This document shows, piece by piece, positions 11,033 through 57,327 of a stretch of 64,000 nt of DNA (the first letter of the stretch is position 1; each line of letters opens with the position of its first letter). The stretch lies in IMG/VR virus record IMGVR_UViG_3300050014_000823, positions 62,001 to 126,000 of that record; one strand, 5' to 3'. The notes beneath the pieces were generated by a model. That model saw only the letters and a list, made by a program, of their open reading frames with translations, did not search any database and was not told where the DNA came from. The translations under genes and the position numbers were made by a program.

Positions 11033-12112
11033 TCATATCAGTTCGTTTTTAATTATTTTCTGTGTACTCCAATGCCCGTGATTATTCTGTACGTGATTTT
11101 TCCGTACATATTTACCACAGACTTTACGAAATTCTGAGTAATGATACTCTCTTGCAAGTCGTACAACATACCGTTCAATTGTTCCGGGGTTGTTCTCCAT
11201 TTTCTTGTTAAGTTCATTAATGAAGTCCATATCCCAAATACCATCATACATAATTGTTGGTGTAACCAATCCCAATAATTCAAACCATTCCTGTGTTTCA
11301 TCCCAATCCAAGCACATGTTTTTCTCATTCCATATACTAAATGCAAGAAAAATTGATTTTAATGCATTGCCATTTGCTTTGGTATAATGTATTGCATGCT
11401 TTGCATACATATTCTCGCCACATAATCTCCAATCTTCCGGAAGTTCGTAACCAATTTGTGCCCATAGATTTTTAACCCAATTTCTTGAAGAATGACTGTC
11501 AGTATCTAATGAACGTGCATGTATGATATCTTTCATCATAGTAGTGTTCTCGCCATCCATTTTTTCCATAATAATTACACGTTGACCTTCGAATATTGAG
11601 ACATCTTCCATCATGCGGTCATCCCTATTCATGCCAGGTGACCAAGGTAGGTGAAAAGTACGATTGTATTTCACCCTATTTGTGAATTGTCCTAATATAT
11701 TACCTTGATTTAATATCTTTTGAACAGAATCATCATTAAAAAGTTCACCTTTTATTCTCGTACCGTTACGTAAAATTTCATTACCCCACTTGTCATATTC
11801 TACGTCTTCATATAAATGTTGTGGTAATACAATTGTTTTAATACCCGCTAATTCTCTGATTCTATCACACGAAAGAATAGTTTGTTCTGCTTCAATATGA
11901 TGAAGTTCGCAAAGCGTTGCCCCGTTATCAATGAAATATCCCTCACCAAATGGTTTAAATAATCTACGTTCAAGTATGTGATGTGCACTTAAATTAACTA
12001 CTTCACCGAATTGGTTGAATTGTGCCTTTTCACCACAAACAATGCATTTGTATCCATCCCTCTTAAGAACAGCATTTCTAAATTCATCCCGTGTTAATTC
12101 GTCTTTCATCAC
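11033..12112 (-). CDS. HNH domain-RNA ligase fusion
   Basis: RDGYKCIVC..AHHILERR..NGATLCELHH; ligase KYNRTFHLPWS, EKMDGEN, GEN, KYVR. Confidence 0.85.
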   Translation of the reverse strand: MMKDELTRDEFRNAVLKRDGYKCIVCGEKAQFNQFGEVVNLSAHHILERRLFKPFGEGYFIDNGATLCELHHIEAEQTILSCDRIRELAGIKTIVLPQHLYEDVEYDKWGNEILRNGTRIKGELFNDDSVQKILNQGNILGQFTNRVKYNRTFHLPWSPGMNRDDRMMEDVSIFEGQRVIIMEKMDGENTTMMKDIIHARSLDTDSHSSRNWVKNLWAQIGYELPEDWRLCGENMYAKHAIHYTKANGNALKSIFLAFSIWNEKNMCLDWDETQEWFELLGLVTPTIMYDGIWDMDFINELNKKMENNPGTIERYVVRLAREYHYSEFRKVCGKYVRKNHVQNNHGHWSTQKIIKNELI

Positions 12113-30948: not shown

Positions 30949-30978
30949 ATTATACGAAATTGTCCCGGAAATGTTACA
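30949..30978 (-). promoter_or_regulatory. Phage promoter motif TGTAAC-N18-TATAAT
   Basis: attatacgaaattgtcccggaaatgttaca. Confidence 0.8.
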
Positions 30979-31759
30979 AATCCGGAACAAAAAAATCAAG
31001 AAATATTTTATCCTGAGTAAAAGTAGGACATTCACTACTTACCCAAACAGTCCTCTGATAGGCTTTTTGTTGCAGTTCTGCTTTAACAAAAGGAGTTTCC
31101 ATTTCACGAACTTCTTTCTTAATAAACCTACCTCTTTTTTGCTGTGGGGTAAAGTCATTCCAGTTGATACCCTTTTGAAATATCATTTCCTGCTGTACGT
31201 TCATGTTCTTGCCGTTGAGTTCTCTGTGGCTGTAAAGTGTCTGAGCAACGCTTGAAATACTGTTGCGAACTGTGTCCTGTTGTCTCCAGATGAAGTAGTT
31301 TTTCACTTCATCGTTTGAAGGAATAGTAAACACCCTTGCATCGAATTCGGCAAGTTTCATATCGGCATAATTAAATCCAATAGTATGTTTTAATTGTCGA
31401 ATTGTTCTTAATTGGTTGAACTTAGCGGTAGCTATACTTGCTGCAACACTGACAACCTTCTGCACGTTACCGTCAAACCAGGCATCAGTACCGATTTCAT
31501 CGAAGTCGGTCATAAGAATACTGATTTCGTCACTCTGAACAAATGCGAATTTAGCACCCTGTATGTTCTTGCAGAGATACATTGCAGCTCCATCCATGTC
31601 AGTCATAAGACCTTCATCGAAAGGTTTTTTCATACCTCTGGTATAAGTGTGAAATGCTTTACCGTCAATACGGATAATGCTATATGACCTACGGGGAAGC
31701 CAAGTCTTTGCTCGGTCCTCATAATAGGATTTCATGCGATTTCCAAGTTCATCAACCAT
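30974..31759 (-). CDS. thg1: tRNA(His) guanylyltransferase Thg1-like protein
   Basis: RIDGKAFH, QSDEIS, FDAR, YFIWRQQD..RNS. Confidence 0.93.
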   Translation of the reverse strand: MVDELGNRMKSYYEDRAKTWLPRRSYSIIRIDGKAFHTYTRGMKKPFDEGLMTDMDGAAMYLCKNIQGAKFAFVQSDEISILMTDFDEIGTDAWFDGNVQKVVSVAASIATAKFNQLRTIRQLKHTIGFNYADMKLAEFDARVFTIPSNDEVKNYFIWRQQDTVRNSISSVAQTLYSHRELNGKNMNVQQEMIFQKGINWNDFTPQQKRGRFIKKEVREMETPFVKAELQQKAYQRTVWVSSECPTFTQDKIFLDFFVPDL

Positions 31760-32289: not shown

Positions 32290-32796
32290 TTATTCGAATA
32301 GATTATATGGTTTATTAACTTTTACTACGCCTACTTTAATATAGTTTTTAATATCAAGTATCTTAGCAACATCTTTTAACTTACAAACAAATACCCGGTC
32401 TTGGTCAAAATCAACTTCTTTAAGTTGATTATCTGCACCGTGATAATTTATTTTTATTCTCGTTAACTTGGGAACAACAAATACAATATATCTTCCCGCA
32501 AGCGAACCTAACTTGTAATATCCTTCGAACCGTTCAATACTAACAGTCAAGTATTCGAGTGTTTTAAAAATATCTTCCATGTTAGAAGGTATTAATATTA
32601 CATTTGCACCACCATGATTAGTGTCTTGAAAAATTGTTGCAGAAGTCTGATTGATTTTCGTACACAATGTTTGATTCCAATCAGTCTGATGCATACTTTC
32701 AGGATACTTACTGTCTTTATATCCTTCATAATCCCATGAAACTAAGGGTATGTGAGTCGATAAAAAGTTTTGTAGTTTACTCATTTTACTCTTCAT
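32290..32796 (-). CDS. Stand-alone fragment resembling the C-terminal half of a T4 gp23-like major capsid protein
   Basis: DWNQTLCTKINQTSATI...GGANVI...IFKTLEY...GSLAGRYIVF. Confidence 0.6.
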   Translation of the reverse strand: MKSKMSKLQNFLSTHIPLVSWDYEGYKDSKYPESMHQTDWNQTLCTKINQTSATIFQDTNHGGANVILIPSNMEDIFKTLEYLTVSIERFEGYYKLGSLAGRYIVFVVPKLTRIKINYHGADNQLKEVDFDQDRVFVCKLKDVAKILDIKNYIKVGVVKVNKPYNLFE

Positions 32797-33829
32797 TTTT
32801 AATCAAGAATTTGTTTGAAATTGCTTTAAAGCTAAGTCTGCCTTGATTTTTAAGTTCGTATCGTACAAATACAACACCCTCACGTTCTGTCTGAGGATTA
32901 AGAGCACTTTTACCTTCTGCGTATGCGAGTATTTCATCAACACTGGCAGGAAGTATGTAATTCCTGTCAAGTATAGGAACTGTCTCAATTTTAAGCGTAT
33001 TGCACAGTTCAATCATTTCTTCGTATGGTAAAAATTCATACCTGTCAATGTCGAACATACGGAAAAACCTTACGGTCTGACCTTTGAGTTTATATTTGTT
33101 CTTCTGAATACCCTCACCAATGATTTCACCCTGCAGACCTAAGTTCCTGCCAAGTACACCAAGTTTTTCCTCAAGAAAGTTCTGACGAGCAAATTTCCAA
33201 AATGAATTACTTGGACTTTCGTAGTATTCCCAATTCCTACCGCAAACACCGAACATACCGTCTTTCCAGAAGAAACTTCCACTGCTACCATCGAGTTTTT
33301 CGGTAGTAACAAATGACTGACCTGCATATTCAACAGGTATATGTGGAAGTATCTGAATACGGTCTTCATCGGTAATCATCATGAATGAAGGAAAACCACC
33401 TTTAGCATCACCCGCAAGTTCTGCAGGGATAGGTGCTTCGTATTTTTCAACACCAAGTTCCTCGCTGACATCAAAACCAACAGGACTGTCAGCTAAGTCA
33501 TGTAAGGTAATTCTTGACCTTTCAAGTTCTTCGATATGCCATTTAGTATTAGCATTGAGTATATCCAACGGAAAACAAATGCCCTGGCTTACTTGCCCTC
33601 TCAAGCGTACTGTTCTGATTCTGTAGTTGTTGTGCTTTAAGAATTCAAATTCCTCACGTTTTGGAACGAGACTATCTATTTCCAGATAGACCACTAATTC
33701 ACCTACATGAAACTGATTTTTCTTAACTACGACTTTCCAGCCAAGAATTTGTGCAACCTCGATTGCTTGTGCATCTGGAATAGGACTAAGATTTAAAATC
33801 CTCTGAATTGTTGCTAATTTTCGTGCCAT
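32786..33829 (-). CDS. RNA ligase (DRB0094/Rnl2-like) with N-terminal OB domain
   Basis: RKLATI..SQG; TDEDRIQ, TEKLDGSS, QGE, REGVV, FKAIS. Confidence 0.92.
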   Translation of the reverse strand: MARKLATIQRILNLSPIPDAQAIEVAQILGWKVVVKKNQFHVGELVVYLEIDSLVPKREEFEFLKHNNYRIRTVRLRGQVSQGICFPLDILNANTKWHIEELERSRITLHDLADSPVGFDVSEELGVEKYEAPIPAELAGDAKGGFPSFMMITDEDRIQILPHIPVEYAGQSFVTTEKLDGSSGSFFWKDGMFGVCGRNWEYYESPSNSFWKFARQNFLEEKLGVLGRNLGLQGEIIGEGIQKNKYKLKGQTVRFFRMFDIDRYEFLPYEEMIELCNTLKIETVPILDRNYILPASVDEILAYAEGKSALNPQTEREGVVFVRYELKNQGRLSFKAISNKFLIKNEE

Positions 33830-34329
33830 TTTATTCTGCTATATAAATGTATGAATCTCTTTCATATTCAAATTTACCACTTTCTTTTGTCGCATCTACT
33901 TGATAATCTTTCACCCGGCTATTATCGGGTTTAACAGGACATTTAACTGCATAATGTATTTGACATCCTGCAATTATTATTTCTCTCTCATTACCGCCAA
34001 TTCTTGCAAACCAATTACTGCTGTTTCTATTGGTTATGACACCCAAGAATTTGTCATCCATTATCACAACTTCTCCCCACGCACTACGATACTGTTTGCC
34101 ATCGGGAGCAATGAACCAATGGTCTGTCGTGATTAAATATTTTCCTGTCATATTCATGGTAATCTCAATATAAATAAACAATCCGATTTATGTATGCCAC
34201 CATAGCAATCACAGTGTTCGCACTTCTTACCCAACGATTGCTTTGCATCTTCTATCGCTATTGCCAATGCAACCCAAGCATCTTCACTGATAGTAACTAC
34301 TTTCTTCTCTTTTTCCATAATAATAAAAT

Positions 34330-34490
34330 TAAAAAACCAGTTCATTTATCCACTGGCAAGTTAGGTTTAGTTGCCAACTTTCCTTTGTGACGGTGCTTCC
34401 TTTATCTGGTATACCAGACCACAAAATTGAGCATGTTATCCGTCATTTCAACACGCAGCTATCGTGTTAGTAATCGAGCGCAAGATAATA
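34330..34490 (-). ncRNA. Putative structured leader RNA ending in an intrinsic terminator
   Basis: Hairpins AACACG/CGTGTT, TGACGG/CCGTCA, TCTGG/CCAGA, TGGCAA/TTGCCA, then CCAGT/ACTGG-TTTTTT. Confidence 0.4.
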
Positions 34491-34532
34491 ATTCGAAAAT
34501 TAATATCCAAGTATTTATATAAAAATTTTCAT

Positions 34533-35360
34533 ATGAAACCAAATTTTAGTGAATCTGAATATCAAAACGCCAAATCAGAAGAATTATTATCTTGTTTATG
34601 TTATTCTTGTAATAACTCATTTAAAACATTTAAAAAAAATATAACCAGAGAATTAAATCACAATATGGAAATAAATAAATTTTGTTCAAAAAAATGTCAA
34701 GGAGTATATTATACTAACAAAAACACTATCAAAACAAAATGTAAATGTTGTAATTCCGAAATGACTATACCATTATCTCAATATAAAAATTCTGAATCGG
34801 GAAATAATTTTTGTTCACGTAGTTGTAACGCAACATATAATAGTCCACAAAGAATTTATAATAGTAGAATCAAAACTAACTGCAAAAATTGTAATAAAGA
34901 AATTAATGTAATATTTTCAGTTCATAAAAAATCAAAATCTGGAAATCATTTTTGTTCACAGTCTTGTGCTGGTACGTATAATAATACGCATAAAACTAAG
35001 GGTAATCGTAGGTCTAAACTTGAAAAATATCTTGAAGAACAATTAATTTTATTATATCCAGATTTGGAGATATTATTTAATGATAAAAATATTATTAATT
35101 CTGAATTAGATATTTATATTTCCGAATTTAAAGTTGCTTTTGAACTTAACGGTATTTTTCATTATGAACCAATATATGGTCAGAAAACATTAGGAAATAT
35201 TCAAAATAATGATAATCGTAAATTTCAAGCATGTTTAGAAAAAAGTATTGAATTATGCATCATAGATACTTCTCAGCAAAAATATTTTAAAGAAGAATCA
35301 TCCCAAAAATATTTGAACATTATTAAAATAATTATTGATAGTAAATTCAAAAAATTTTGA
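34533..35360 (+). CDS. Zinc-ribbon repeat plus Vsr/Hef-like endonuclease
   Basis: CxxC..FCS..C repeats; ELDIY..AFELNGIFHY. Confidence 0.75.
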   Translation: MKPNFSESEYQNAKSEELLSCLCYSCNNSFKTFKKNITRELNHNMEINKFCSKKCQGVYYTNKNTIKTKCKCCNSEMTIPLSQYKNSESGNNFCSRSCNATYNSPQRIYNSRIKTNCKNCNKEINVIFSVHKKSKSGNHFCSQSCAGTYNNTHKTKGNRRSKLEKYLEEQLILLYPDLEILFNDKNIINSELDIYISEFKVAFELNGIFHYEPIYGQKTLGNIQNNDNRKFQACLEKSIELCIIDTSQQKYFKEESSQKYLNIIKIIIDSKFKKF

Positions 35361-35464
35361 GCGCAGTGAGGGATTCGAACCCCCCTGTCCAGTAAATTGG
35401 TGCACCATTTCTTCTGTCAACCACATCTTCCCGATGTGTGCCTTCCCCATTAGACTTACTGCGC
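35360..35464 (-). tRNA. Atypical tRNA-like RNA (anticodon GGA, Ser-like) with very long variable arm
   Basis: Acceptor GCGCAGT/ACTGCGC, D arm GTCT/AGGC, anticodon arm CACAT-CGGGAAG-ATGTG, T arm GGGGG-TTCGAAT-CCCTC. Confidence 0.7.
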
Positions 35465-35473
35465 ATAAAAAAA

Positions 35474-35733
35474 TCTTTCTGACCGTTCCAAGTACGGAAT
35501 AGCTTTTCAGTCCGTTTGTCCATTTGAACGAATTCATTTGGGGTCTGTGTGGGTCTCCGGATGCGCATTGTGAAGAGGCGTGAGTCCCTACTGCTACCTT
35601 TCAGTAAACACCGTCCTCTTGGAAGGACATACAAGGCGACCACAGGTTCAACTGTCAGGAATTTCAAGTGTTTACGGGGACGAATCCCCCTCCCGTGCTT
35701 AAACAACCTTGCTGTTTACCTACAGCAGAAAGA
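35474..35733 (-). ncRNA. Unclassified ~260-nt structured RNA
   Basis: GC-rich; closing stem TCTTTCTG/CAGAAAGA; several internal hairpins; promoter and boxA upstream. Confidence 0.6.
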
Positions 35734-35737
35734 AGTA

Positions 35738-35763
35738 TTTTCAAAGAACATCGTACAAATGTA
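35738..35763 (-). promoter_or_regulatory. Bacteroidota -7 element (TACATTTG) followed by boxA-like GTTCTTTGAAAA
   Basis: Minus strand TACATTTGTACGATGTTCTTTGAAAA. Confidence 0.6.
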
Positions 35764-36152
35764 GTAATTATTCTAACAAGTTCGATATATATTTAATAGT
35801 TTCTTCACATTTTGGTATTTCTTTTTCAATCAACTTCTTCAACTTGCCTTTCAAGTCTTCTTTTTCTTCCTTGAAGTAGAGTTTGAGAAGCGACAGGAGA
35901 TTATACGAAGGTGTGAGTTTGTTGCGAATATCTGCACCAACAGTACTTGAATCTCGTATTTCATACATTTCGAATTCTACAAGTTCAAGGTCATCCAAAT
36001 CAAATTGGTCCGGAAGTGCTTCATACTTTGCATAGTATTCTCTCAAACCTTCCATAGTAGCAGTCAATGGCTGTGTGTGAGGTAGGTTACAAGTATACAT
36101 TATCATGGTATTAGCCATAATATCAATGATGACGAACTCTTTAGGTTCTCTT

Positions 36153-36362
36153 TTAGTTTGTAGTGCCTTGAATTTCATATGGTTGAGTATTTTTGAAAAT
36201 ATAAACATCGTAAATTGCATCACGTAAATGATTCAGTGCTTTTTCCTCAGTTTCACCCTCTGCAATTATTTCCGGGAATTCTTTGAAAAAGGCAGTAAAC
36301 CCACCAATTTTTGGGTCTTCCACAAATATGGGAGTTAATGGTATGGTTACAAGTGCTATCAT
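36153..36362 (-). CDS. HicB-like antitoxin domain protein
   Basis: DPKIGGFTAFFKEFPEIIAEGETEEKALNHLRDAI. Confidence 0.75.
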   Translation of the reverse strand: MIALVTIPLTPIFVEDPKIGGFTAFFKEFPEIIAEGETEEKALNHLRDAIYDVYIFKNTQPYEIQGTTN

Positions 36363-43725: not shown

Positions 43726-44613
43726 CTACAAATCCAGTGGATAAAAATTCTTCTTGAAGTTATTTGCAAGTAAATCCCGATACTGTTTATAGTCATCTTT
43801 GCCATTCTGATGCTTCGTCAGAAGAAATGTTAAAACTGCTTGATTTACTTCCTTATCCATTTTCAATTTCGTTCCTGCTGCTGATTTATCACCTAACAAA
43901 TATAGTGCAATTTTCTTACAGAGTTCCAAATCAATGTCCTCAGTAGCAATCTTTTTCACAAAAAGGTCGGTAGGATACCACATTTTATACTTGGCACTGA
44001 TGGTTTCGGCTTTCTTGCCTAACTTGGTCATATGATAGAAACTAATCACTATAATACCATGAGTCTCAGGCACTACGAAGACTGTTGTTGGGTTTAATCC
44101 CATATGAGTATAGCCAACTTGACCAAACCACAATGAAATTTCGAACATCCTGGAAAACAGCCAATTAACGTGATGTTGTGGTAATTTCTGTCCTGTTAAG
44201 GGCACTGCACGGTCTTTCAGATTTATTACGAGTTTGTCTTTTTCTAAGACCATACTTTCTGGCAGGTATCTTTTGAAATTGTCTGACGCTTTGTCATGAA
44301 GTGCCATTAAAGTATTGTAATTATTGACTGATTTAGTCAGCAGCTTACGATTGGCATCAGTCACGACATACTCAATGCGCTTTTCGAATACCTTGAATGG
44401 TCCGGTTTCATCAACATAAGGAGTACCATTTTCGATGACATCCTTATAGTGATTCATAATTGCCATTGCGTTGCTTGCGCCACTAAGACTACAAGCATCT
44501 GGGTGAATTAATTTACTGTAACGCAAATAATCCTTTTTCCAATCATCGGTAGAAAAAATGTCTGAGGGTTTCTTTGACTTAATTAGTTTGTCAACGAGTT
44601 CAACGTCTGTCAT
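43726..44613 (-). CDS. J-domain-like (HPD) plus protein-kinase-fold (pseudokinase) protein
   Basis: YSKLIHPD; WLFSRMFE..GYTHMGLNPTTVFVVPETHG. Confidence 0.65.
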   Translation of the reverse strand: MTDVELVDKLIKSKKPSDIFSTDDWKKDYLRYSKLIHPDACSLSGASNAMAIMNHYKDVIENGTPYVDETGPFKVFEKRIEYVVTDANRKLLTKSVNNYNTLMALHDKASDNFKRYLPESMVLEKDKLVINLKDRAVPLTGQKLPQHHVNWLFSRMFEISLWFGQVGYTHMGLNPTTVFVVPETHGIIVISFYHMTKLGKKAETISAKYKMWYPTDLFVKKIATEDIDLELCKKIALYLLGDKSAAGTKLKMDKEVNQAVLTFLLTKHQNGKDDYKQYRDLLANNFKKNFYPLDL

Positions 44614-45209
44614 TATGTTCGCTTTATTGAGTAGTTAAAAAATCTTTCTATTCTATATACTATATTGGGTGTTAGTCCACTATATGCATCACACTGAAAA
44701 AAGTTATATTGTTGCCAGAGCAACATATCCGAGTCATCGTCAATGATTGCATAACGGCTGAATTCGTGGCTGTGTACACCAAACCATTTTTGACAATTAT
44801 CATCCAGCCATTTGTATATTTCAACACCACGTATTCTTTCATTGCAATATCCGGTTTTATCTATTATTGTAAATGTACCGCCACAATAATTGAATATTTC
44901 CTGTAATTCTTCCGGAGTCCAACCACTTCTCATTGATGCTGAGAGGACTACAGCACTGTTGGTTCTTTCACAAAGTCCATTAAGCATGTCCATACGCATC
45001 GGACACATTTCACCTTTATAGTAATCCCACTTAGAAATTTCCTTTGTCTTAAGCATCTTCCGGAGATATTTCTTCACTGTCTTATAGAAAGGTATACCAC
45101 TATATTGTGTCAAGTGTTTATACCTTTCAGTATAAAATAACTGACAATTCAAAACACCATCAACGTCCAAAAACACCAAATTTTGAAATTTATTAAGTTC
45201 TGGTTCCAT
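44613..45209 (-). CDS. HAD domain protein (RNA-repair 'Swiss army knife' type)
   Basis: FLDVDGVLN, VLSASMR, RGVEI, IIDDDSD, GLT. Confidence 0.8.
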   Translation of the reverse strand: MEPELNKFQNLVFLDVDGVLNCQLFYTERYKHLTQYSGIPFYKTVKKYLRKMLKTKEISKWDYYKGEMCPMRMDMLNGLCERTNSAVVLSASMRSGWTPEELQEIFNYCGGTFTIIDKTGYCNERIRGVEIYKWLDDNCQKWFGVHSHEFSRYAIIDDDSDMLLWQQYNFFQCDAYSGLTPNIVYRIERFFNYSIKRT

Positions 45210-46358: not shown

Positions 46359-46451
46359 AAAATACACAAATAAATTTATAATACAATAATAATTTGCTAA
46401 TGTCAAAAATTTTACTACATTTGTCCTATGAAGTTTACCTGTATATAATAA

Positions 46452-47652: not shown

Positions 47653-48222
47653 ATGAATACAACATTTAAAAATTTAAGAGAAATTGCACGTAAACAATAC
47701 AATGATTCTAATTGTAGTTATGGTGATGGTGAATATATGATTCATATTGATATGGTGAGCGATTTTCTTTTTAATCACATTGCAGTATTTAAAACACTTA
47801 ATGATGCCGAAAACACATTAAATGCATCGCTTTTTCACGATAGCATGGAAGATGCCAAACAAACCTATAACGATATTTGTATGGTTGCAGGTAAAGACGT
47901 TGCCGACATTACATTAGGTGTAACCGATGTACCTGCCGAAAACCGTCTGATGAAGCATTTGCTAACAATGGGTAAAACTGTTCGTGACTATCGTGCAATC
48001 ATACTGAAAATGGCTGATATGTATTCAAATGCCAAGTACAGTAAGCAAAGTGGCAGTACTATGTATGTAAAGTATGTTGCAGAGTACCGCTATCGTAAGC
48101 CAATATTTGAAATGGCATTAAGTTGGTACAAGAACGACCTTAACCAAGAAGTACTTGCTGTCATTTGGAAAGAACTTGACGAAATTCACACACCAGATAA
48201 TTTTGTTCTTAAAACGATATAG
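47653..48222 (+). CDS. HD hydrolase, RelA/SpoT (Mesh1)-like
   Basis: Y..H...V, FHDSMED, VTD, LKMAD..N. Confidence 0.7.
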   Translation: MNTTFKNLREIARKQYNDSNCSYGDGEYMIHIDMVSDFLFNHIAVFKTLNDAENTLNASLFHDSMEDAKQTYNDICMVAGKDVADITLGVTDVPAENRLMKHLLTMGKTVRDYRAIILKMADMYSNAKYSKQSGSTMYVKYVAEYRYRKPIFEMALSWYKNDLNQEVLAVIWKELDEIHTPDNFVLKTI

Positions 48223-48270
48223 GGTATGCCGAAAACCTCATAGAGTAGGCACAATTAATACACATTAAAC

Positions 48271-49290
48271 ATGTTGTTATTTAAAATTTTAGCTTGGCTC
48301 ATATTAATTTATGGGATTGTTGCACTCATCCTGCGCACAGTAAAGGTTGTTAATGAAGTCCCGGATGGTGACAAAGACAGCTACGGCAGACAGAAAACCA
48401 AAAAAGTCAGTGAAAGCATCAAATTGCCATTCGCAATTCCTTCACTTATTTTAGGTTTAATTACTGCTGTTACTCTTGCACTTGTTACAATCGTTGGCGC
48501 ACAGGAAGTTGGCGTTATTACTACCCCGCAGGGAGTCGTAGAACAGCCGTTACACACTGGTTGGCATATGGTGATGCCTTGGAATAAAGTTCATTTTATG
48601 GACAAAACCGTATGGGTATATACTTGTGCACAAGCCATTAAAGAAGGCGCAAAGCCTAATGCAGACGCAATCTGGGCACCGACTAAGGACGGTATTAAGA
48701 TGGGTTTTGACGTATCAGTTTCATGGAGAATTGTCGGTAATGAAGCACCGTGGATTTATCAGAACGTAACTGAGAATGATGGTGGTAATTCAGGTAGATA
48801 TATTTGGCTCGAAGAAAACGTAATCAGACCCAAATTAAAATCCGCTATGGCATTAACAGTATCTAACTACACCCCTATCGAAGCCTACAGTACCAAAAGA
48901 CAGGACATTCAGAACGATATTCTTAATCGTATGATTGCCGAATGTAAGCAGTACAAGTTGCAGATTGACAACGTTGACGTAAGAGAGGTTTACTACAACC
49001 CCGAATACGAAACATCAATCAACAACAAGAAACTTGCAGAACAGGAAGCATTACGTCTTGTGGAAGTTACCAAACAGCGTGAGGAACTTAAGAAACAGGA
49101 AGCCATCAACAAGGATATCGCTATCTTGAAGGCAGAAGGTGAAGCTAAGTCATTACAGATTAAAGGTAACTCAATCTCTAACAACCCGAAGATTATCCAG
49201 CTTGAGTGGGTAAACAAATGGGATGGAAAATTACCTATCTACATGATGGGTGATGCGCAGAGTGTCATGATGAACATGAATAATAAATAG
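48271..49290 (+). CDS. SPFH/prohibitin (band 7) membrane protein
   Basis: TM helices; GWHMVMPW, TKDG, AEGEAKS, KWDGKLP. Confidence 0.9.
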   Translation: MLLFKILAWLILIYGIVALILRTVKVVNEVPDGDKDSYGRQKTKKVSESIKLPFAIPSLILGLITAVTLALVTIVGAQEVGVITTPQGVVEQPLHTGWHMVMPWNKVHFMDKTVWVYTCAQAIKEGAKPNADAIWAPTKDGIKMGFDVSVSWRIVGNEAPWIYQNVTENDGGNSGRYIWLEENVIRPKLKSAMALTVSNYTPIEAYSTKRQDIQNDILNRMIAECKQYKLQIDNVDVREVYYNPEYETSINNKKLAEQEALRLVEVTKQREELKKQEAINKDIAILKAEGEAKSLQIKGNSISNNPKIIQLEWVNKWDGKLPIYMMGDAQSVMMNMNNK

Positions 49291-52688: not shown

Positions 52689-52904
52689 ATGAAAAAGATT
52701 ATTAAAATTATGGAAAATTTGAAAAACCAATCGTTGAAAGTTGTCCGTGTTGATAAACACGAATTCGAACTTGATAATGGTGATGTGTATCCAATACCTT
52801 TCGAATTGGATGTTGATGAAGATATCAGCGTTGAAGAATTTCAGAAGATTCTGGACTCTTCAAAAGAACTGATGCTAAAGATACTTGAACAGTCAAATGA
52901 ATAA
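52689..52904 (+). CDS. Small acidic protein translationally coupled to tnpA
   Basis: Stop overlaps tnpA ATG (ATGAATAA); preceded by CTATTTAT. Confidence 0.65.
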   Translation: MKKIIKIMENLKNQSLKVVRVDKHEFELDNGDVYPIPFELDVDEDISVEEFQKILDSSKELMLKILEQSNE

Positions 52905-53487
52905 GTTATTATCCATACAACAAGTATCTATGACTCTTGGTGTCACCAAGAAAACATTACGGATATGGGATAACGAAGGTAAACTCATATCAGTTAAAAC
53001 CGTTGGTGGACACCGTAAATACCGTGAAGAAGACATTAATAACTACATGGGTGAACATAGTGTTGAACCAGTGATAACAGGTGTTGCCACATATAGTCGT
53101 GTCAGTTCACATGAACAGAAAACTAAAGGAGATTTGGACAGACAGTCTCAGAGGATTTCTGAGTACTGTGCAAAGAAGAAATACAGCGTGGAACACATTA
53201 TTAAGGATGTTGGGTCTGGACTTTCGGACACCCGTGTTGGTTTTGTTAAACTCGTGGATTTGGTTATTAAGAAAAAAATCAGTAAAATTGTAATCGAAAA
53301 CAAAGACAGGTTAACCAGATTCCAATTCAATCTGATAAAGACATTCTTTAACAGTTATGATGTTGAACTGGAATGTGTGGATAACAACAATATATCCAAT
53401 GAGGAAGAGTTTGTGAACGACATAATGATGCTCATGGCTTCCTTCTCAGGAAAACTCTACGGGAAAATAATAGTAACTAAAATATAG
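52897..53487 (+). CDS. tnpA: IS607 transposase (MerR-HTH serine recombinase), C-terminus truncated
   Basis: TLRIWD..GGHRKY, YSRVSS, DVGSG, KDRLTRF, SGKLYG then abrupt end. Confidence 0.9.
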   Translation: MNKLLSIQQVSMTLGVTKKTLRIWDNEGKLISVKTVGGHRKYREEDINNYMGEHSVEPVITGVATYSRVSSHEQKTKGDLDRQSQRISEYCAKKKYSVEHIIKDVGSGLSDTRVGFVKLVDLVIKKKISKIVIENKDRLTRFQFNLIKTFFNSYDVELECVDNNNISNEEEFVNDIMMLMASFSGKLYGKIIVTKI

Positions 53488-53533
53488 AACAATATTATAC
53501 AAATATAAACTTTGGTATAGTTTTTGTAGTGTT

Positions 53534-54139
53534 ATGTATATGATTGGAATAAAAGAAGCAGCAGAATTACTTGGAATTACTCCCAAAACATTAAGATTAT
53601 GGGAGAAAAACGGTAAAATAACGAGTCATAGGACTGAAGGTCAACATAGAAGATATGTAGTTTCAGAACTTATCGGTAGTCGTGGAGACAAACTATTAAC
53701 AATTGCTTATGCCAGAGTATCAAGTTATGACCAGAAAGATGATTTAAAACGACAAGAATTGGTATTGGAAAGTTATTGTGCGAGTAAAGGATTTGAATTT
53801 GAATTAATTTCTGATTTAGGTTCTGGAATGAACTACAAGAAAAAAGGACTTATCAGATTAATAAAACTGATTTGCAGTAATCAAATTGATAGATTGGTAA
53901 TCACACATAAAGACAGATTATTGAGATTTGGAAGTGAGTTAATTTTTATGCTTTGCGAAATCTTTGCTGTTGAAGTTTGTATAATTAATAGGAGTGAAGA
54001 TAGCACCTTTGAAGAAGATTTAGCCAACGATGTTTTGGAAATTATAACTGTCTTCAGTGCAAGATTATATGGAAGTCGAAGCCATAAAAATAAACAGATA
54101 ATACAACAATTAAAACAGGTAGCCAAAGATTTGAAATGA
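53534..54139 (+). CDS. tnpA: IS607 transposase
   Basis: YARVSS, DLGSG, HKDRLLRFG, FSARLYGSRS. Confidence 0.95.
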   Translation: MYMIGIKEAAELLGITPKTLRLWEKNGKITSHRTEGQHRRYVVSELIGSRGDKLLTIAYARVSSYDQKDDLKRQELVLESYCASKGFEFELISDLGSGMNYKKKGLIRLIKLICSNQIDRLVITHKDRLLRFGSELIFMLCEIFAVEVCIINRSEDSTFEEDLANDVLEIITVFSARLYGSRSHKNKQIIQQLKQVAKDLK

Positions 54140-55311
54140 AGTCAATTAAGGTAAGATTAGAACTAAACAATAAGCAGACTACACTTGCCAATAAACACGC
54201 AGGAGTGGCAAGATATGCTTATAATTGGGGAAAATCTGTCTGTGATTTGGCAATACAAAATAAGGAGCACAGACCAACAGCAATTGATTTACATAAGAAA
54301 TTTGTTAAAGAAGAAAAAACTATTAAGTCTTGGTTGTATGAAGTATCCAAGTGCAGCCCACAACAAGGTTTAAGAAATTTGGATGAAGCATACAAAAGAA
54401 CATTCAAAGTTAAAAGTAGTCATTTTCCTAAGTTCAAAAAGAAAGGACAACACGATAGTTTTTATCTGGAAGGTGCTATCAAAACTAATAGTAATAAAAT
54501 TAAAGTACCTAAGTTTGGTTGGTTAAGATGTTCAGAAACATTACCAGAATGTGAAGTCAAAAATGTTGTTATAAGTAAAACTGCTAATCAATGGTTTATT
54601 GCTTTTAAAATACCATTTGAACCACAGATTACTAATAAGGTGAATGGTGTTGTCGGTGTTGATTTAGGTATTAAAACACTTGCAGTATTGTCAGATGGTA
54701 AAGTATTTGAAGCAGTTAAACCATATAAACGAAACAAACGGAAATTAAAAATACTACAAAGAAGATTAAGTAAGAAACAGAAAGGTAGCCAAAATAGAAA
54801 AAAAGCCTGTGTGAAGATAGCAAAACTACATTACAGGATAGCAAACATTAGAAAAGATACCACACATAAATTAACAACATATTTAAGTAAAAACCACACT
54901 GAATGTGTTATTGAAGACCTTTGTGTTCGTGGAATGAGTAAAAATCACAAATTAGCATCAGCCATATTGGATGGTGGATTTTCAGAGTTCAGAAGACAAT
55001 TAGAATATAAGTGTCAATGGTATGGTTCAACACTAACAATAGTTGATAGATTTTATCCAAGTTCAAAGACTTGTAGTGGATGTGGTAATGTTAAAAAAGA
55101 ACTAAAATTATCTGAAAGAGAATATGTTTGTGAGAATTGCGGATTGGTGATAGATAGAGACCTAAATGCTGCAATTAATTTAAGAAATAAGTCGGTGAGT
55201 TACACCGAATCAGCCTGTGGAGTGCCTAAACAACTTGATACTTTTGTATCTGGTGGCGCAATGAATCAGGAAGTAAATTGCAATGTTCAACATTGTGTAA
55301 GTTTTACGTAA
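54136..55311 (+). CDS. tnpB: RNA-guided endonuclease TnpB
   Basis: RuvC GVDLG, IEDL, DRDLNAA; zinc finger CSGC..CENC. Confidence 0.95.
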   Translation: MKSIKVRLELNNKQTTLANKHAGVARYAYNWGKSVCDLAIQNKEHRPTAIDLHKKFVKEEKTIKSWLYEVSKCSPQQGLRNLDEAYKRTFKVKSSHFPKFKKKGQHDSFYLEGAIKTNSNKIKVPKFGWLRCSETLPECEVKNVVISKTANQWFIAFKIPFEPQITNKVNGVVGVDLGIKTLAVLSDGKVFEAVKPYKRNKRKLKILQRRLSKKQKGSQNRKKACVKIAKLHYRIANIRKDTTHKLTTYLSKNHTECVIEDLCVRGMSKNHKLASAILDGGFSEFRRQLEYKCQWYGSTLTIVDRFYPSSKTCSGCGNVKKELKLSEREYVCENCGLVIDRDLNAAINLRNKSVSYTESACGVPKQLDTFVSGGAMNQEVNCNVQHCVSFT

Positions 55312-55387
55312 CGGTTAAAGGAGTTGATTTAACCGAACCTCAAATTTTTGAATTATTCGAAAAAGAATTATTATAAATTAGTTAATT

Positions 55388-55750
55388 ATGGAAAGACAAA
55401 TTAAATTTAGAGCATGGGACGAAGGTAATAAAATCATGCACAACAACTTTCAATTCATTCGTTCAGGAGAAGAAGGTAATGATTGGATAGTATTCACATC
55501 CGATAAACAAACTCTTAAAGATAAACAGCATCCATTAGAAAATCCTTATTTTCAACAACAATTGAAAATAATGGAATGGTCTGGAATCGAAAACATCTTC
55601 GAAGGAGATATTGTCACATTAGGCGAAATTGATGGAGAGGGTGTAGTTAAATACAATGAAGACAGATTTTATGTTGATTATGGAACTACGCATACAAGAG
55701 TGAGTAAAAATCATAAAGTATTAGGAAATATTTACGAAAAAACTGAATAA
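55388..55750 (+). CDS. YopX-family protein
   Basis: IKFRAWD..IFEGDIV..VLGNIYE. Confidence 0.85.
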   Translation: MERQIKFRAWDEGNKIMHNNFQFIRSGEEGNDWIVFTSDKQTLKDKQHPLENPYFQQQLKIMEWSGIENIFEGDIVTLGEIDGEGVVKYNEDRFYVDYGTTHTRVSKNHKVLGNIYEKTE

Positions 55751-56193
55751 AATGAGTGGAGAAGTAGAATTCGGAAGATGTGATATTTGTAAAGAGGATA
55801 AACCTCTTGAAAGGACATACTATCATTATGACATTAAATGTGAATGTCATTCACCCCGTCATTTTGAATTGGTCAGGCATTGTAAAGATTGTGTTCCAGT
55901 AGAACCTCTTGAAACAACCTTAACTATTAAAATAGAGACATTAAGAATATTATTACACTTGCCGAAACATTAATAATATGAAATCACAATATAAAATAAT
56001 TAAAAAATTTAAACCCACAAAAATAAACGGGATTGATTTTTATTCTGATGTACAGGTGTGGAAAATGATTGATATGGCATACGAACAAATTCGAAACAAA
56101 GAAGAAATATCAGAACCAATGGAATCAGGCGCAGAGTTTTATTGCCCTGATTGTGGTAAAAGTGTTTACAGTTGTGGATGTTAATTTATAAAT

Positions 56194-57327
56194 ATGAAAC
56201 TAATCCGTTCAACCAAATGTAGTCTGAAATTCGCAACAGCGAAGAAGCAGAATGAACTATCGGTCATCTTGAGTGAATACTCGAAGGTTGTTAATATCTT
56301 CATTGACTATTTCTGGTTGAATGCTGATAAAGCAACTAAAGGTGAACTTCTTAAACCAGTTGTTGATATTCCCGAAACATGGTTATCAGCACGACTGAGA
56401 AAAGTAGCAGCCAGAGAAGCAATCGACATGATTAATGCCAGTAAGCAAAGGTGGAAAGAAAAAGCAGTGAAGCCAGTTCATAAAGGTAACAGAATGTATG
56501 TTAGTTGCACCATTGCTGATTTGGTATCCACAAAGAACAACGGATATAAAACCGAAGACAGTTTGAGGTTTGATGCTTGGTTACACATAGCAAGTGTTGG
56601 TAACAAAATGATAATGGACTTACCGATTAAATATCACAAACATTTCAACAAATATAATAACATCGGTAAGAGATTGAATTCATATATCATCACCAAGAAT
56701 TATGTCCAGTTCAGTTTTGAGATAATCACCGAGACAAAAAAGGAAGGTAAACATTGCATCGGTATCGACACTGGAATAAACGCACTGGCAAGTCTTAACA
56801 ACGGCAATCAGTATGGTCTGGACATCAAAGGTTGTATCGAGAGAGTTAAAAGATGTAAGCAGAAGTCCAAAGGTTATTATGTTGCTAAAAGAGCGTTGAA
56901 ACAAAGAATTGATGAAACAGCGAAAGAGATATTAGTAAAAGAAAATCCAGATTTAATTGTTGTTGAACAACTAAAAAAGATGGGATATAAAAGTAAAGCC
57001 AAACGCTTGTTGGCTAAAAATATCAGGCGTTCTATCGGAACTTGGAATTGGAAGTATTGGCTCAAAAGGTTAGAAGCACAATGCGAGATTAACCGTGTTA
57101 GTTTTCGCAGTGTAGCACCTTATTACACCAGTACAACCTGTCCAGTATGTGGTCATTCTGATAGGGGAAATCGACTCGGTGAAGTGTTCTTGTGTCTATC
57201 ATGTGGTCACAAAGACAATGCAGATATAAATGCGGGTAAGAACATTTTGAATCGGTTTCTCACGGGACAATACGGTGCTCGTTACAAGGAAATAAAGGAT
57301 GTGCAAGTTTGTGCAGATTTATTTTAA
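56194..57327 (+). CDS. tnpB: Second, divergent TnpB
   Basis: GIDTG, VVEQL, TSTTCPVC..CLSC..NADINAG. Confidence 0.9.
   Translation: MKLIRSTKCSLKFATAKKQNELSVILSEYSKVVNIFIDYFWLNADKATKGELLKPVVDIPETWLSARLRKVAAREAIDMINASKQRWKEKAVKPVHKGNRMYVSCTIADLVSTKNNGYKTEDSLRFDAWLHIASVGNKMIMDLPIKYHKHFNKYNNIGKRLNSYIITKNYVQFSFEIITETKKEGKHCIGIDTGINALASLNNGNQYGLDIKGCIERVKRCKQKSKGYYVAKRALKQRIDETAKEILVKENPDLIVVEQLKKMGYKSKAKRLLAKNIRRSIGTWNWKYWLKRLEAQCEINRVSFRSVAPYYTSTTCPVCGHSDRGNRLGEVFLCLSCGHKDNADINAGKNILNRFLTGQYGARYKEIKDVQVCADLF

What the first reader, a model, noticed from the sequence alone, without database searches (positions are those of the whole stretch)
35474..35763. Unclassified ~260-nt structured RNA with host-type promoter and boxA, co-transcribed with the tRNA mimic
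Seen: GC-rich island in an AT-rich genome. TACATTTG then GTTCTTTGAAAA precede an RNA closed by TCTTTCTG/CAGAAAGA, containing GCTGT/ACAGC, GGGGA-TTCG-TCCCC, long-range GTAAACAC/GTGTTTAC, GTCCT/AGGAC, TACTG/CAGTA and ACGGA/TCCGT stems, followed by T7 and the tRNA-like gene. Established: boxA marks antiterminated stable-RNA operons. I see no RNase P, tmRNA, SRP or 6S hallmarks. Inference: candidate new phage ncRNA class and the best novel-system candidate in this window.
Basis: partly seen in the sequence, partly recalled or inferred. Interest (0 to 1): 0.8.

Follow-up and report, generated by a model that had tools for sequence, protein, structure and literature searches.

The report
Phage scaffold RNA carrying AbiF-antitoxin hairpin
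The roughly 260-nt RNA is a real, conserved and probably transcribed non-coding RNA of an uncultured peat jumbo phage, and its near-invariant core copies the RNA antitoxin hairpin that bacteria use to restrain the AbiF suicide nuclease, so the phage probably uses it to disarm that defence.

Summary
Window 35733..35474 (minus strand) is a GC-rich, non-coding, 260-nt RNA gene. A conserved leader precedes it and a tRNA-like gene follows. No Rfam family reaches its threshold. It is still not a wholly new class. Its near-invariant 51-nt core (94-98% identical between lineages, against 82% for a neighbouring gene) is a hairpin. The 19-nt loop and inner stem of that hairpin are letter-identical to the abiF motif (Rfam RF03085), and the geometry is the same. 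RF03085 is the RNA antitoxin of the AbiF HEPN toxin. In bacterial genomes the same 19-mer lies directly upstream of a roughly 310-aa Abi_2 gene in 60 of 108 testable copies. In 101 testable phage copies, and in this window, no AbiF gene was found. The rest of the RNA is a scaffold supported by covariation (helices P1, P2', P3, P4) and found in seven phage lineages. In two lineages other hairpins replace the abiF module. Relatives occur as 169-268-nt contigs in metatranscriptomes. Most likely function (inferred, about 0.5): a stable decoy, matured by tRNA-processing enzymes, that keeps host AbiF inactive. Promoter and boxA are plausible but unproven. I rate it a new variant of a known kind.

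The parts
35756..35767 (-). TTACTACATTTG, containing TACATTTG, a possible Bacteroidota-type -7 promoter element (TAnnTTTG)
   Evidence: An exact second copy lies at 46412-46423 in a divergent intergenic region with a TTTG at -33 spacing. TATATTTG (L338) and TATCTTTG (L328) occupy the same position upstream of the leader. The motif alone occurs at chance frequency.
35738..35749 (-). Conserved leader GUUCUUUGAAAA (boxA-like), 4 nt upstream of helix P1
   Evidence: GUUCUUUGA precedes the RNA in the window, L083, L204, L338, L328 and L332; L327 has CACUUUAAAGA instead. The 9-mer is not enriched in the window. Its function is untested.
35474..35733 (-). RNA X: 260-nt structured non-coding RNA from P1 5' strand to P1 3' strand
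   Evidence: Homologues of 197-228 nt occur in L083, L204/L205, L338, L328, L327/L334 and L332. No reading frame is conserved. Metatranscriptome contigs cover 35527-35714.
35726..35733 (-). P1 5' strand UCUUUCUG
   Evidence: Pairs with 35474-35481. It is 8/8 canonical in all seven lineages, with one U-A to U-G change in L327.
35474..35481 (-). P1 3' strand CAGAAAGA
35713..35719 (-). P2' 5' strand GUAAACA (RNA positions 15-21)
Evidence: Pairs with UGUUUAC at 35604-35610. The second pair is U-A in the window, C-G in five lineages and U-G in L338. RNAalifold proposed this helix too.
35604..35610 (-). P2' 3' strand UGUUUAC (RNA positions 124-130)
35707..35712 (-). P3 5' strand GCAAGG (RNA positions 22-27)
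   Evidence: Pairs with CCUUGU at 35631-35636. Five different covarying versions exist across lineages: CAAGG/CCUUG, UAAGU/ACUUA, UAAUU/AGUUA, GUAUG/CAUAC and GUGCA/UGCAU.
35631..35636 (-). P3 3' strand CCUUGU (RNA positions 98-103)
35613..35628 (-). P4 hairpin GUCCU-UCCAAG-AGGAC with a conserved loop
   Evidence: Stem versions are GUCCU/AGGAC, AUCCU/AGGAU, GUC/GAC, GUCAC/GUGAC, GUUAC/GUGAU and GUUCU/AGAAC. The loop is UCCAAG or AUUCCAA.
35551..35588 (-). abiF-type (AbiF antitoxin) hairpin. Outer stem GGGACUC/GAGACCC with one A.A mismatch, spacer A, inner stem CGC/GCG, 11-nt loop CUCUUCACAAU, 3' bulge CAUCCG.
   Evidence: The 19-mer at 35562-35580 is identical to that of more than 240 database abiF-motif copies. 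The geometry equals the RF03085 consensus. The Rfam local match scores 19.1 bits. The outer stem is completely replaced with compensation in L338 and L328. The 51-nt core is 94-98% identical between lineages.
35520..35541 (-). Lineage-specific hairpin CCAAAUGAA-UUCG-UUCAAAUGG
   Evidence: Present only in the window and the X19/X20 variant; absent from L083, L204, L338 and L328.
35467..35473 (-). U7 spacer between RNA X and the tRNA-like gene
   Evidence: A U5-U7 run follows the RNA in the window, L204, L338 and L328, but not in L083.
35360..35464 (-). tRNA-like gene tL1, the probable RNase P/Z processing signal
   Evidence: Rfam tRNA 29.9 bits with a roughly 35-nt insertion; ARAGORN finds none. 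Homologues lie in L004, L083, L204, L338 and L328. The acceptor, D and T arms are canonical and the anticodon arm is not.
34327..34476 (-). RNA Y: second unclassified conserved RNA of the same operon, ending in a terminator hairpin followed by U6
   Evidence: nhmmer E = 2.7e-21 against L204; sequence. Its 3' motif occurs in 16 IMG/VR loci from 16 contigs. No Rfam match.
34464..35360 (+). AT-rich endonuclease-like ORF (298 aa) on the opposite strand, occupying the place of the second tRNA-like gene (tL2) of related phages
   Evidence: GC is 0.19-0.27. Pfam gives only a weak zinc-finger hit. In L204 and L083, tL2 lies between tL1 or RNA X and RNA Y.

Best explanation
RNA X is a stable, roughly 260-nt non-coding RNA of a 299-kb peat jumbo phage. 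It belongs to a family of modular scaffold RNAs. Helices P1, P2', P3 and P4 form the scaffold. At a fixed site the scaffold presents a cargo hairpin, and in this phage the cargo is a copy of the bacterial AbiF antitoxin RNA (abiF motif).

Proposed mechanism. The RNA is transcribed early from its own promoter, together with the tRNA-like gene. Host RNase P and RNase Z cut at the tRNA-like element and release it. It accumulates because its ends are locked in P1. Its abiF hairpin then occupies the RNA-binding groove and HEPN active site of the host's AbiF-family toxin. That keeps the nuclease silent once host antitoxin synthesis stops, so abortive infection is not triggered. The neighbouring RNA ligases, Thg1-like enzyme and HAD repair protein would mend RNA damage that still occurs.

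Shown: the RNA family, its covarying scaffold, the identity of the core with the abiF motif, the absence of any AbiF gene nearby, and the presence of relatives in RNA libraries.

Inferred: binding to AbiF, the decoy function, tRNA-type processing, and the link with the repair genes.
For: - **Core identity.** The 19-mer CGCCTCTTCACAATGCGCA occurs once in the window. It is identical to the loop and inner stem of abiF motifs that score 40.5-54.8 bits, above the Rfam gathering score of 37, in 12 of 13 stand-alone phage loci tested. The layout of 6-7 bp outer stem, 1 nt spacer, 3 bp inner stem, 11-nt loop and 6-nt 3' bulge matches RF03085.
- **Selection acts on that hairpin.** The core is 94-98% identical between lineages. 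The 5' domain is about 61% identical and an adjacent protein gene 82%. The outer stem is fully rewritten with compensation in L338 and L328.
- **The motif is a bona fide antitoxin in bacteria.** Of 108 testable bacterial copies, 60 are followed within 500 nt by a member of one roughly 310-aa protein cluster (the ORFs start 3-51 nt downstream in the examples printed). Four of these were tested and are Pfam Abi_2, E = 8e-45 to 4e-57. The published work on AbiF and its RNA antitoxin is in PMC12373285, PMC12737573 and PMC13064643.
- **Phage copies are orphans.** tblastn with 53 AbiF proteins gave no hit in the window or in any of the first 205 fetched loci, 203 of them IMG/VR phage loci. Of the phage copies, 101 have at least 1100 nt of downstream sequence. 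None of ten downstream phage ORFs is Abi_2. None of the 36 window ORFs of at least 190 aa is Abi_2, and ten unannotated ORFs gave no AbiF or other significant hit in PADLOC.
- **tRNA linkage.** In phages, 23 of 117 abiF motifs lie within 300 nt of a same-strand tRNA, against 3 of 128 in bacteria. Two other RNA-ligase phages carry abiF-like loops inside tRNA clusters.
- **Expression.** Metatranscriptome assemblies hold 199-218-nt contigs covering 35527-35714, and 169-nt and 268-nt contigs over the core at depths 6.9 and 24.9. Eight RNA runs hold its words.
- **Context.** The window also encodes two RNA ligases, a Thg1-like enzyme and a HAD_SAK_2 repair protein.
- **Precedents.** Phage TE escapes the ToxIN system with an antitoxin-RNA mimic (PMC3475682). 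[quoted passage not shown]
Against: - No experiment supports any step, and the host and its AbiF are unknown.
- The Rfam model scores the window hairpin at only 19.1 bits.
- The outer stem carries a conserved A.A mismatch. Folded alone, the hairpin is weak: -5.7 kcal/mol, z = +0.45.
- Two lineages (L327/L334 and L332) keep the scaffold but lack the abiF hairpin, so the scaffold has a role that does not depend on AbiF.
- About half of the phage abiF motifs are followed by a U-run (58 of 115) and could serve mainly as terminators.
- Only 64 kb of the 299-kb genome was visible. The IMG/VR scan for AbiF used just two peptide patterns, so a phage-borne AbiF elsewhere in the genome is not excluded.
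- The RNA-library evidence rests on assembled contigs, which can derive from contaminating DNA.
Confidence: 0.5

Rival explanations
1. RNA X is the resident antitoxin of a toxin-antitoxin pair carried by the phage itself, for example for superinfection exclusion or genome maintenance. The AbiF-like or other HEPN toxin would lie outside the 64-kb window.
For: Phage- and prophage-borne AbiF systems exist (PMC12373285; 21 IMG/VR loci). 235 kb of the contig was not inspected.
Against: In the 60 AbiF-linked bacterial copies found here the toxin gene lies directly downstream of the RNA. Here tRNA-like and other RNA genes follow instead. No Abi_2 gene occurs in the window or in any RNA X locus. The window's contig is not among the IMG/VR AbiF hits, although that scan had low sensitivity.
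Confidence: 0.1
2. The abiF-like hairpin in phages is bound by something other than AbiF. Candidates are a phage protein or the host transcription machinery, since its loop CUCUUMACAAU resembles the E. coli boxA sequence as recalled from memory. RNA X would then act in transcription, processing or another housekeeping role of the phage.
For: Phage copies sit upstream of capsid, terminase and lysin genes, and half carry U-runs like terminators. The scaffold persists without the hairpin in two lineages. A second boxA-like leader precedes the RNA.
Against: The loop is letter-identical between phage orphans and bacterial copies that are physically coupled to AbiF genes across many phyla. AbiF is the only documented partner of this motif (PMC12373285, PMC12737573). 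The boxA resemblance is recalled from memory and was not tested.
Confidence: 0.2
3. RNA X is mainly a leader or spacer of a tRNA-like operon. It would be a processing or antitermination cassette whose product is discarded, and the abiF hairpin would be a captured passenger.
For: It is always adjacent to tRNA-like genes. Module order is shuffled between phages: X-tL1, tL1-X-tL2 and X-tL2.
Against: The core is more conserved than the flanking genes. Helices covary. Discrete RNA-sized contigs appear in RNA libraries. A passenger hairpin would not stay 94-98% identical.
Confidence: 0.1
4. The region is not a functional element, only a GC-rich remnant of foreign DNA.
For: Folding energy is no better than for shuffled sequence.
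Against: Seven lineages retain the scaffold with compensatory changes, and the element has a conserved operon position and leader.
Confidence: 0.03

Closest known systems
abiF RNA motif (Rfam RF03085), the RNA antitoxin of AbiF: AbiFr of a Prevotellaceae bacterium and RCd22 of C. difficile
   Same: The 11-nt loop and 3-bp inner stem are identical. The outer stem, 1-nt spacer and 6-nt 3' bulge have the same layout.
   Different: RNA X is embedded in a 260-nt scaffold instead of being a roughly 45-nt sRNA with its own -10 box and terminator. No AbiF gene lies downstream. It has one motif copy, whereas RCd22 has two. An A.A mismatch sits in the outer stem, and the score is below the Rfam threshold.
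Pseudo-ToxI of phage TE, an RNA mimic of a type III antitoxin (PMC3475682)
   Same: It is a phage-borne copy of a bacterial RNA antitoxin without the toxin, proposed here to work the same way by keeping the abortive-infection nuclease bound.
   Different: The toxin family differs (ToxN versus the HEPN protein AbiF). Pseudo-ToxI is a tandem repeat array, whereas RNA X is a single hairpin in a structured scaffold. The pseudo-ToxI function was shown genetically. The function here is only inferred.
Stand-alone orphan abiF hairpins in other phages, for example cyanophage S-CREM1 (PMC9964418) and at least 119 IMG/VR contigs
   Same: They have the same motif, the same lack of an AbiF gene, and a frequent position next to tRNA genes.
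   Different: They are simple hairpins of about 37 nt, and about half carry a U-run. RNA X adds a covarying scaffold of about 200 nt.
GOLLD and ROOL RNAs, large phage-associated RNAs often found next to tRNA genes (PMC5737381)
   Same: They are phage-borne structured RNAs of unknown function that lie next to, and are possibly co-transcribed with, tRNAs.
   Different: They are much larger (from memory, roughly 580-800 nt). Neither gave an Rfam match here, and neither is known to contain an abiF module.
Phage T4 stable RNAs C and D, co-transcribed with the tRNA cluster (from memory)
   Same: They are small stable RNAs processed out of a phage tRNA operon.
   Different: No sequence relationship was tested, and their function is also unknown.

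Membership tests
abiF RNA motif / AbiF antitoxin RNA (RF03085) | 11-nt loop CUCUnAACnAU closed by a 3-bp inner stem | tested here: met
   The window has CGC-CUCUUCACAAU-GCG. This 19-mer is identical to at least 119 phage and at least 120 bacterial database loci.
abiF RNA motif / AbiF antitoxin RNA (RF03085) | 6-bp outer stem, 1-nt 5' spacer and a roughly 6-nt unpaired 3' bulge | tested here: met
   The window reads GGGACUC-A-...-CAUCCG-GAGACCC, the same layout as the model consensus. One A.A mismatch is present. The stem covaries in L338 and L328.
abiF RNA motif / AbiF antitoxin RNA (RF03085) | Score at or above the Rfam gathering score of 37 bits | tested here: not met
   19.1 bits, E = 2.7, local match to model positions 8-26 only. 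It is not listed at gathering threshold.
abiF RNA motif / AbiF antitoxin RNA (RF03085) | Lies directly upstream of an Abi_2 (AbiF) toxin gene | tested here: not met
   No Abi_2 gene among the 36 window ORFs of at least 190 aa. tblastn with 53 AbiF proteins gave no hit. The rest of the 299-kb genome was not seen.
abiF RNA motif / AbiF antitoxin RNA (RF03085) | Short independent sRNA with its own -10 box and a U-run terminator | tested here: not met
   Bacterial copies: 74 of 124 have a -10-like box and 107 of 124 a U-run. In RNA X the hairpin is internal, with about 145 nt on its 5' side and about 77 nt on its 3' side.
abiF RNA motif / AbiF antitoxin RNA (RF03085) | Binds AbiF and neutralises its RNase activity | not testable with these tools
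   This needs co-expression or toxicity rescue, a gel-shift assay, or a structure.
Phage-encoded type III antitoxin mimic (pseudo-ToxI type) | Phage carries the antitoxin RNA without the toxin | tested here: met
   within the 64-kb window and in all related loci.
Phage-encoded type III antitoxin mimic (pseudo-ToxI type) | Confers escape from the cognate abortive-infection system | not testable with these tools
   The phage is uncultured and the host is unknown.
rrn-type antitermination leader (boxA) | boxA consensus near the 5' end of a stable-RNA transcript | tested here: inconclusive
   GUUCUUUGA is conserved in position in six of seven lineages. The 9-mer occurs at chance frequency in the window: 2 found, 1.6 expected. 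The consensus it was compared with is recalled from memory.
rrn-type antitermination leader (boxA) | NusB/NusE binding and antitermination | not testable with these tools
Known large or housekeeping RNAs (RNase P, tmRNA, SRP, 6S, group I/II introns, GOLLD, ROOL, HEARO) | Match to the family covariance model | tested here: not met
   Rfam 15 gave no such match at gathering threshold or at E <= 10 over 34800-36300 and E <= 5 over the whole window. Relatives are also negative.
Protein-coding gene (119-aa ORF 35347..35706) | Reading frame conserved in homologues | tested here: not met
   Homologues have 2-5 stops in that frame. RNA lengths are 260, 228 and 224 nt. The ORF also runs through the tRNA-like gene.

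The most novel reading that the evidence does not exclude
Jumbo phages of this clade carry an RNA-only counter-defence operon with three kinds of element. The first is a scaffold RNA (RNA X) with a fixed cargo site. That site displays interchangeable hairpins: the AbiF antitoxin in five lineages, a GGGUUUGGG-loop hairpin in L327/L334 and other modules in L332. The second is a set of tRNA-like genes that carry 35-130-nt inserts, acting as natural 'tRNA scaffolds'. The third is another unclassified RNA, RNA Y. Host tRNA-processing enzymes would mature all of them, and they would together sponge several host RNA-binding defence nucleases.
Probability: 0.3. Interest if true: 0.8.

Novelty: new variant of a known kind. 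Interest (0 to 1): 0.62.

Why it matters
AbiF is a widespread abortive-infection toxin and the proposed ancestor of Cas13. Its RNA antitoxin was characterised only in 2025.

The searches here give three results that I did not find described in the searchable literature.
- The antitoxin hairpin is common in phage genomes, with at least 119 IMG/VR contigs holding the exact loop.
- In phages it was not seen next to an AbiF gene in any of the 101 copies that could be tested, although more than half of the bacterial copies are.
- In phages it is often wired into tRNA operons.

RNA X is the most elaborate version seen: a covarying, modular scaffold that presents the hairpin. If the decoy function holds, three things follow. 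It would be a second natural case of RNA-based antitoxin mimicry, after pseudo-ToxI. It would give a direct handle for inhibiting AbiF- and Cas13-like nucleases. It would also be an example of natural RNA-scaffold engineering.

If the decoy function fails, the family is still a new conserved phage RNA whose partner is unknown.

Tried and rejected
- **Known RNA families:** Rfam gave nothing for RNA X except the sub-threshold abiF match, at gathering and permissive thresholds, on the window and on relatives.
- **GenBank phages:** blastn and megablast of the RNA, its core and the 12-kb neighbourhood found no match.
- **Thermodynamic support:** none (z = -0.30). Single-sequence MFE folds disagree between homologues, so I did not use them.
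- **Coding hypothesis:** rejected.
- **First relatives examined:** nhmmer of the RNA against 80 RNA-ligase-linked loci found only the phage itself. The upstream ORF of 151 aa also led nowhere.
- **A chance hit:** the gapped pattern ACAATGCGCATCC...ACTTGGAA returned L203, which lies inside a coding region. I discarded it.
- **Helices dropped because they fail in other lineages:** ACGGA/UCCGU, UACUG/CAGUA and my own candidate GACUG/CGGUC, which shows A.A or U.U mismatches in three lineages (and hand comparison).
- **GGGUUUGGG hairpin as a widespread stand-alone motif:** rejected. It was found only inside this RNA family.
- **Literature searches:** the boxA sequence search returned nothing relevant. 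No paper on orphan phage abiF motifs as counter-defence was found. The 2025 Cell paper on AbiF and Cas13 is not in the library and may contain relevant data.
- **The count of structure pairs:** not used. I tabulated helix pairs by script instead.
Full report
**Observation.** In order they are:
- TACATTTG at 35763..35756;
- GTTCTTTGAAAA at 35749..35738;
- an RNA closed by UCUUUCUG (35733..35726) and CAGAAAGA (35481..35474);
- U7 at 35473..35467;
- a tRNA-like gene at 35464..35360 (Rfam tRNA 29.9 bits with a roughly 35-nt insert; ARAGORN finds none).

GC is 0.49-0.53 in the RNA, 0.19-0.29 in the ORF to its left and 0.29-0.39 to its right. Folding energy alone gives no support (z = -0.30). Rfam 15 has no family at threshold here.

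**Source and context.** The window comes from IMGVR_UViG_3300050014_000823, a 299-kb phage contig from peat metagenomes. It has no relative among GenBank phages. On the same strand lie a DNA ligase, small ORFs, RNA X, the tRNA-like gene tL1, a second conserved RNA (RNA Y, 34476..34327), an RNA ligase and a Thg1-like gene. Further away are a second RNA ligase and a HAD 'RNA repair' protein. An AT-rich endonuclease-like ORF on the other strand (34464-35360) sits where related phages have a second tRNA-like gene, tL2.

**It is a conserved RNA gene, not a protein gene.** I found homologues in six further lineages.
- L083 came from a degenerate-pattern scan.
- L204/L205 came from the metagenome scan.
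- L338 and L328 came from phages that share RNA Y.
- A profile built from five sequences added L327/L334 and L332.

Lengths range from 197 to 260 nt. The 119-aa frame is broken in homologues by 2-5 stops and by indels that are not multiples of three.

Hand-curated helices hold in all lineages and show compensatory changes.
- P1 is invariant.
- P2' pairs GUAAACA with UGUUUAC. Its second pair is U-A, C-G or U-G depending on lineage.
- P3 has five different complementary versions.
- P4 has six stem versions around a conserved UCCAAG or AUUCCAA loop.

RNAalifold independently recovers P1, P3 and the core hairpin. The interior of P3 holds lineage-specific hairpins.

**Expression.**
- Freshwater metatranscriptome assemblies contain contigs of 218 and 199 nt. 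They lie entirely within RNA X (35527-35714) and represent a variant with 12-14 substitutions and 16 inserted bases.
- A peat metatranscriptome has 169-nt and 268-nt contigs over the core, at depths 6.9 and 24.9. One of them has L083-type flanks.
- Eight RNA runs from seven studies hold words of the RNA.

This evidence is suggestive only. Contigs do not prove transcription.

**What the core is.** A 51-nt stretch is 94-98% identical between lineages. The 5' domain is about 61% identical and a neighbouring protein gene is 82% identical.

There it forms stand-alone hairpins that Rfam calls abiF RNA (RF03085). Twelve of the thirteen stand-alone loci tested score 40.5-54.8 bits against a gathering score of 37.

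The model consensus is a 6-bp stem, 1 nt, a 3-bp stem, an 11-nt loop and a 6-nt 3' bulge. RNA X has exactly this layout, with one A.A mismatch in the outer stem. That mismatch explains its 19.1-bit local score and its weak stability when folded alone.

In L338 and L328 the outer stem is completely different yet still complementary. L328 carries the Rfam consensus loop.

The abiF motif is the RNA antitoxin that binds and blocks the HEPN RNase AbiF, a type III toxin-antitoxin and abortive-infection system (PMC12373285, PMC12737573, PMC13064643).

**Bacteria versus phages.** The same 19-mer occurs in at least 120 bacterial loci from many phyla.
- Of 108 bacterial copies with enough downstream sequence, 60 are followed within 500 nt by a roughly 310-aa ORF of one cluster. 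The four I tested are Pfam Abi_2.
- tblastn with 53 of these proteins finds nothing in the window or in any of the first 205 fetched loci, 203 of them IMG/VR phage loci. Of the phage copies, 101 have at least 1100 nt of downstream sequence.
- The downstream phage genes I checked are capsid, terminase, lysin and sugar-epimerase genes.
- None of the 36 window ORFs of at least 190 aa is Abi_2, and a PADLOC scan of ten unannotated window ORFs gave no AbiF or other significant hit.
- A low-sensitivity IMG/VR scan for AbiF found 21 loci, none on this contig.

So in every copy I could test, phages carry the antitoxin without the toxin.

Phage copies are also linked to tRNA genes. Of 117 copies, 23 lie within 300 nt of a same-strand tRNA, many within 13-20 nt, against 3 of 128 in bacteria. 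Two other RNA-ligase phages (L018, L055) have abiF-like loops inside tRNA clusters.

**Modularity.** In L327/L334 and L332 the scaffold (P1-P4, the leader and the 3' end) is kept, but other hairpins replace the abiF module and its conserved flanks. One of these is a GGGUUUGGG-loop hairpin with covarying stems. It also occurs inside P3 of L338 and nowhere else in IMG/VR. RNA X is therefore a scaffold with exchangeable cargo.

Operon order is also modular:
- window, L204, L338 and L328: X then tL1;
- L083: tL1, X, tL2;
- L327 and L332: X then tL2.

RNA Y closes the operon in the window, L083, L204, L328, L332 and L338, but not at the L327 locus.

**Leader and promoter.** GUUCUUUGA directly precedes P1 in six of seven lineages. 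It also follows tL1 in L083 and L204. In the three lineages where RNA X opens the operon, a TAnnTTTG element lies 4-9 nt upstream of it. The 12-mer TTACTACATTTG recurs at a divergent intergenic region of the window. Neither short motif is enriched in the window as such. The promoter and boxA readings are plausible on positional conservation but untested. The boxA consensus I compared it with is from memory.

**Mechanism.**
- Best-supported reading: a scaffolded antitoxin mimic. Type III toxins are released when the labile antitoxin RNA is no longer replenished. A phage that makes a stable copy keeps the toxin bound. Phage TE does this with pseudo-ToxI (PMC3475682), and a hairpin from phage sk1 inhibits AbiF (PMC13064643).
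- The tRNA-like neighbour offers RNase P and RNase Z sites to release the RNA.
- P1 locks the ends of the RNA.
- The RNA-repair genes nearby fit a region devoted to surviving RNase-based defences.

All of these functional steps are inference. The rival readings are a resident antitoxin of a distant phage toxin, a non-AbiF partner, or a processing leader. They are listed with their tests in the rival-explanations section.

**Verdict.** The finding is real and more interesting than a plain unknown RNA, but it is not a categorically new class. It is a new, modular variant built around a known antitoxin motif.

**Limits.**
- Only seven lineages are available.
- There is no statistical covariation test.
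- The host is unknown.
- 235 kb of the genome was not seen.
- The key 2025 Cell paper on AbiF could not be read.

Noticed in passing
window 35360-35464 (-); also L004 9749-9859, L083 1045-1152, L204 2701-2820, and downstream of RNA X in L338 and L328: The tRNA-like gene tL1 keeps canonical acceptor, D and T arms. Its 'anticodon' arm varies in length and sequence (loop CGGGAAG in the window, an extended arm in L204). Its long variable arm always carries a palindromic hairpin around GUGCAC (UGGUGCACCA in the window, AAGUGCACUU in L004, with compensatory flanks). It looks like a scaffold or decoy and not a decoding tRNA.
   Followed up: partly
window 34327-34476 (-): RNA Y is a roughly 150-nt conserved RNA that ends in a terminator hairpin followed by U6. 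It closes the RNA operon, is 78-86% identical to L204 and L083, and its 3' motif occurs in 16 IMG/VR loci. It has no Rfam match. It is a second unclassified RNA family.
   Followed up: partly
L204 2835-3005; L083 ~1403-1545; L332 ~2680-2842; L327 ~2780-2960 (-); L328: A second tRNA-like gene, tL2 (Rfam tRNA 36.2 bits in L204), carries a 70-130-nt insertion between its D and T arms. It is missing from the window, where the endonuclease-like ORF 34464-35360 (+; GC about 0.2) occupies its place. That suggests a mobile cassette inserted into or replaced it.
   Followed up: partly
L084-L202 (IMG/VR) and L206-L325 (bacterial genomes): Orphan abiF antitoxin hairpins are common in phage contigs (at least 119 with the exact 19-nt loop). 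None of those tested has an AbiF gene, and 20% lie beside tRNA genes. In bacteria, 60 of 108 testable copies sit directly upstream of Abi_2 genes. I found no description of this dichotomy in the searchable literature.
   Followed up: yes
L279 328-961 (Arenicellales MAG); L244 823-1093: Some bacterial genomes carry tandem arrays of the abiF motif: four copies spaced 205 nt apart in L279 and three copies in L244. These resemble the repeat arrays proposed as a step towards CRISPR-Cas13 arrays.
   Followed up: no
window 35562-35580 (-) and abiF motifs in general: The abiF loop with its closing bases (GCCUCUUAACAAUGC) resembles the E. coli rrn boxA sequence GCUCUUUAACAAU as I recall it, differing by one U. 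This is a lead only and was not tested.
   Followed up: no
L332 ~2500-2535: The 5' domain of the scaffold-only relative contains GGAUUGGGUUAAGUCC. From memory this matches about 13 nt of a universally conserved 16S rRNA segment (near E. coli position 1090). It could be another mimic module. Not verified.
   Followed up: no
window 48219-48251 (+): A DUF805b RNA motif (RF02914, 39.6 bits, above threshold) lies just upstream of an SPFH/Band 7 gene at 48271-49290.
   Followed up: no
window 52885-57327 (+): Two serine-recombinase genes (52885-53487, 53534-54139) precede two TnpB-like genes (54136-55311, 56194-57327). A sub-threshold RAGATH-18 match (32.3 bits, E = 0.033) lies at 55214-55272, at the 3' end of the first TnpB. 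This fits IS607-type elements with their guide-RNA scaffold.
   Followed up: no
window 9412-47650: The region is unusually dense in homing-endonuclease genes (GIY-YIG, NUMOD3 and LAGLIDADG types at 9412, 12118, 17006, 21294, 23946, 27080, 41136, 45193 and 46973). It is also rich in RNA-repair genes: RNA ligases at 11033-12112 and 32786-33829, a Thg1-like gene at 30974-31759, and HAD_SAK_2 at 44613-45209.
   Followed up: partly
L018 3280-3706: A 427-nt gap with no tRNA gene lies inside a 16-tRNA plus tmRNA cluster of another RNA-ligase phage. It ends with an abiF-like loop (GCCUCUUCACAAUGC) about 60 nt before the next tRNA. It may be an unrelated scaffold RNA carrying the same module.
   Followed up: no
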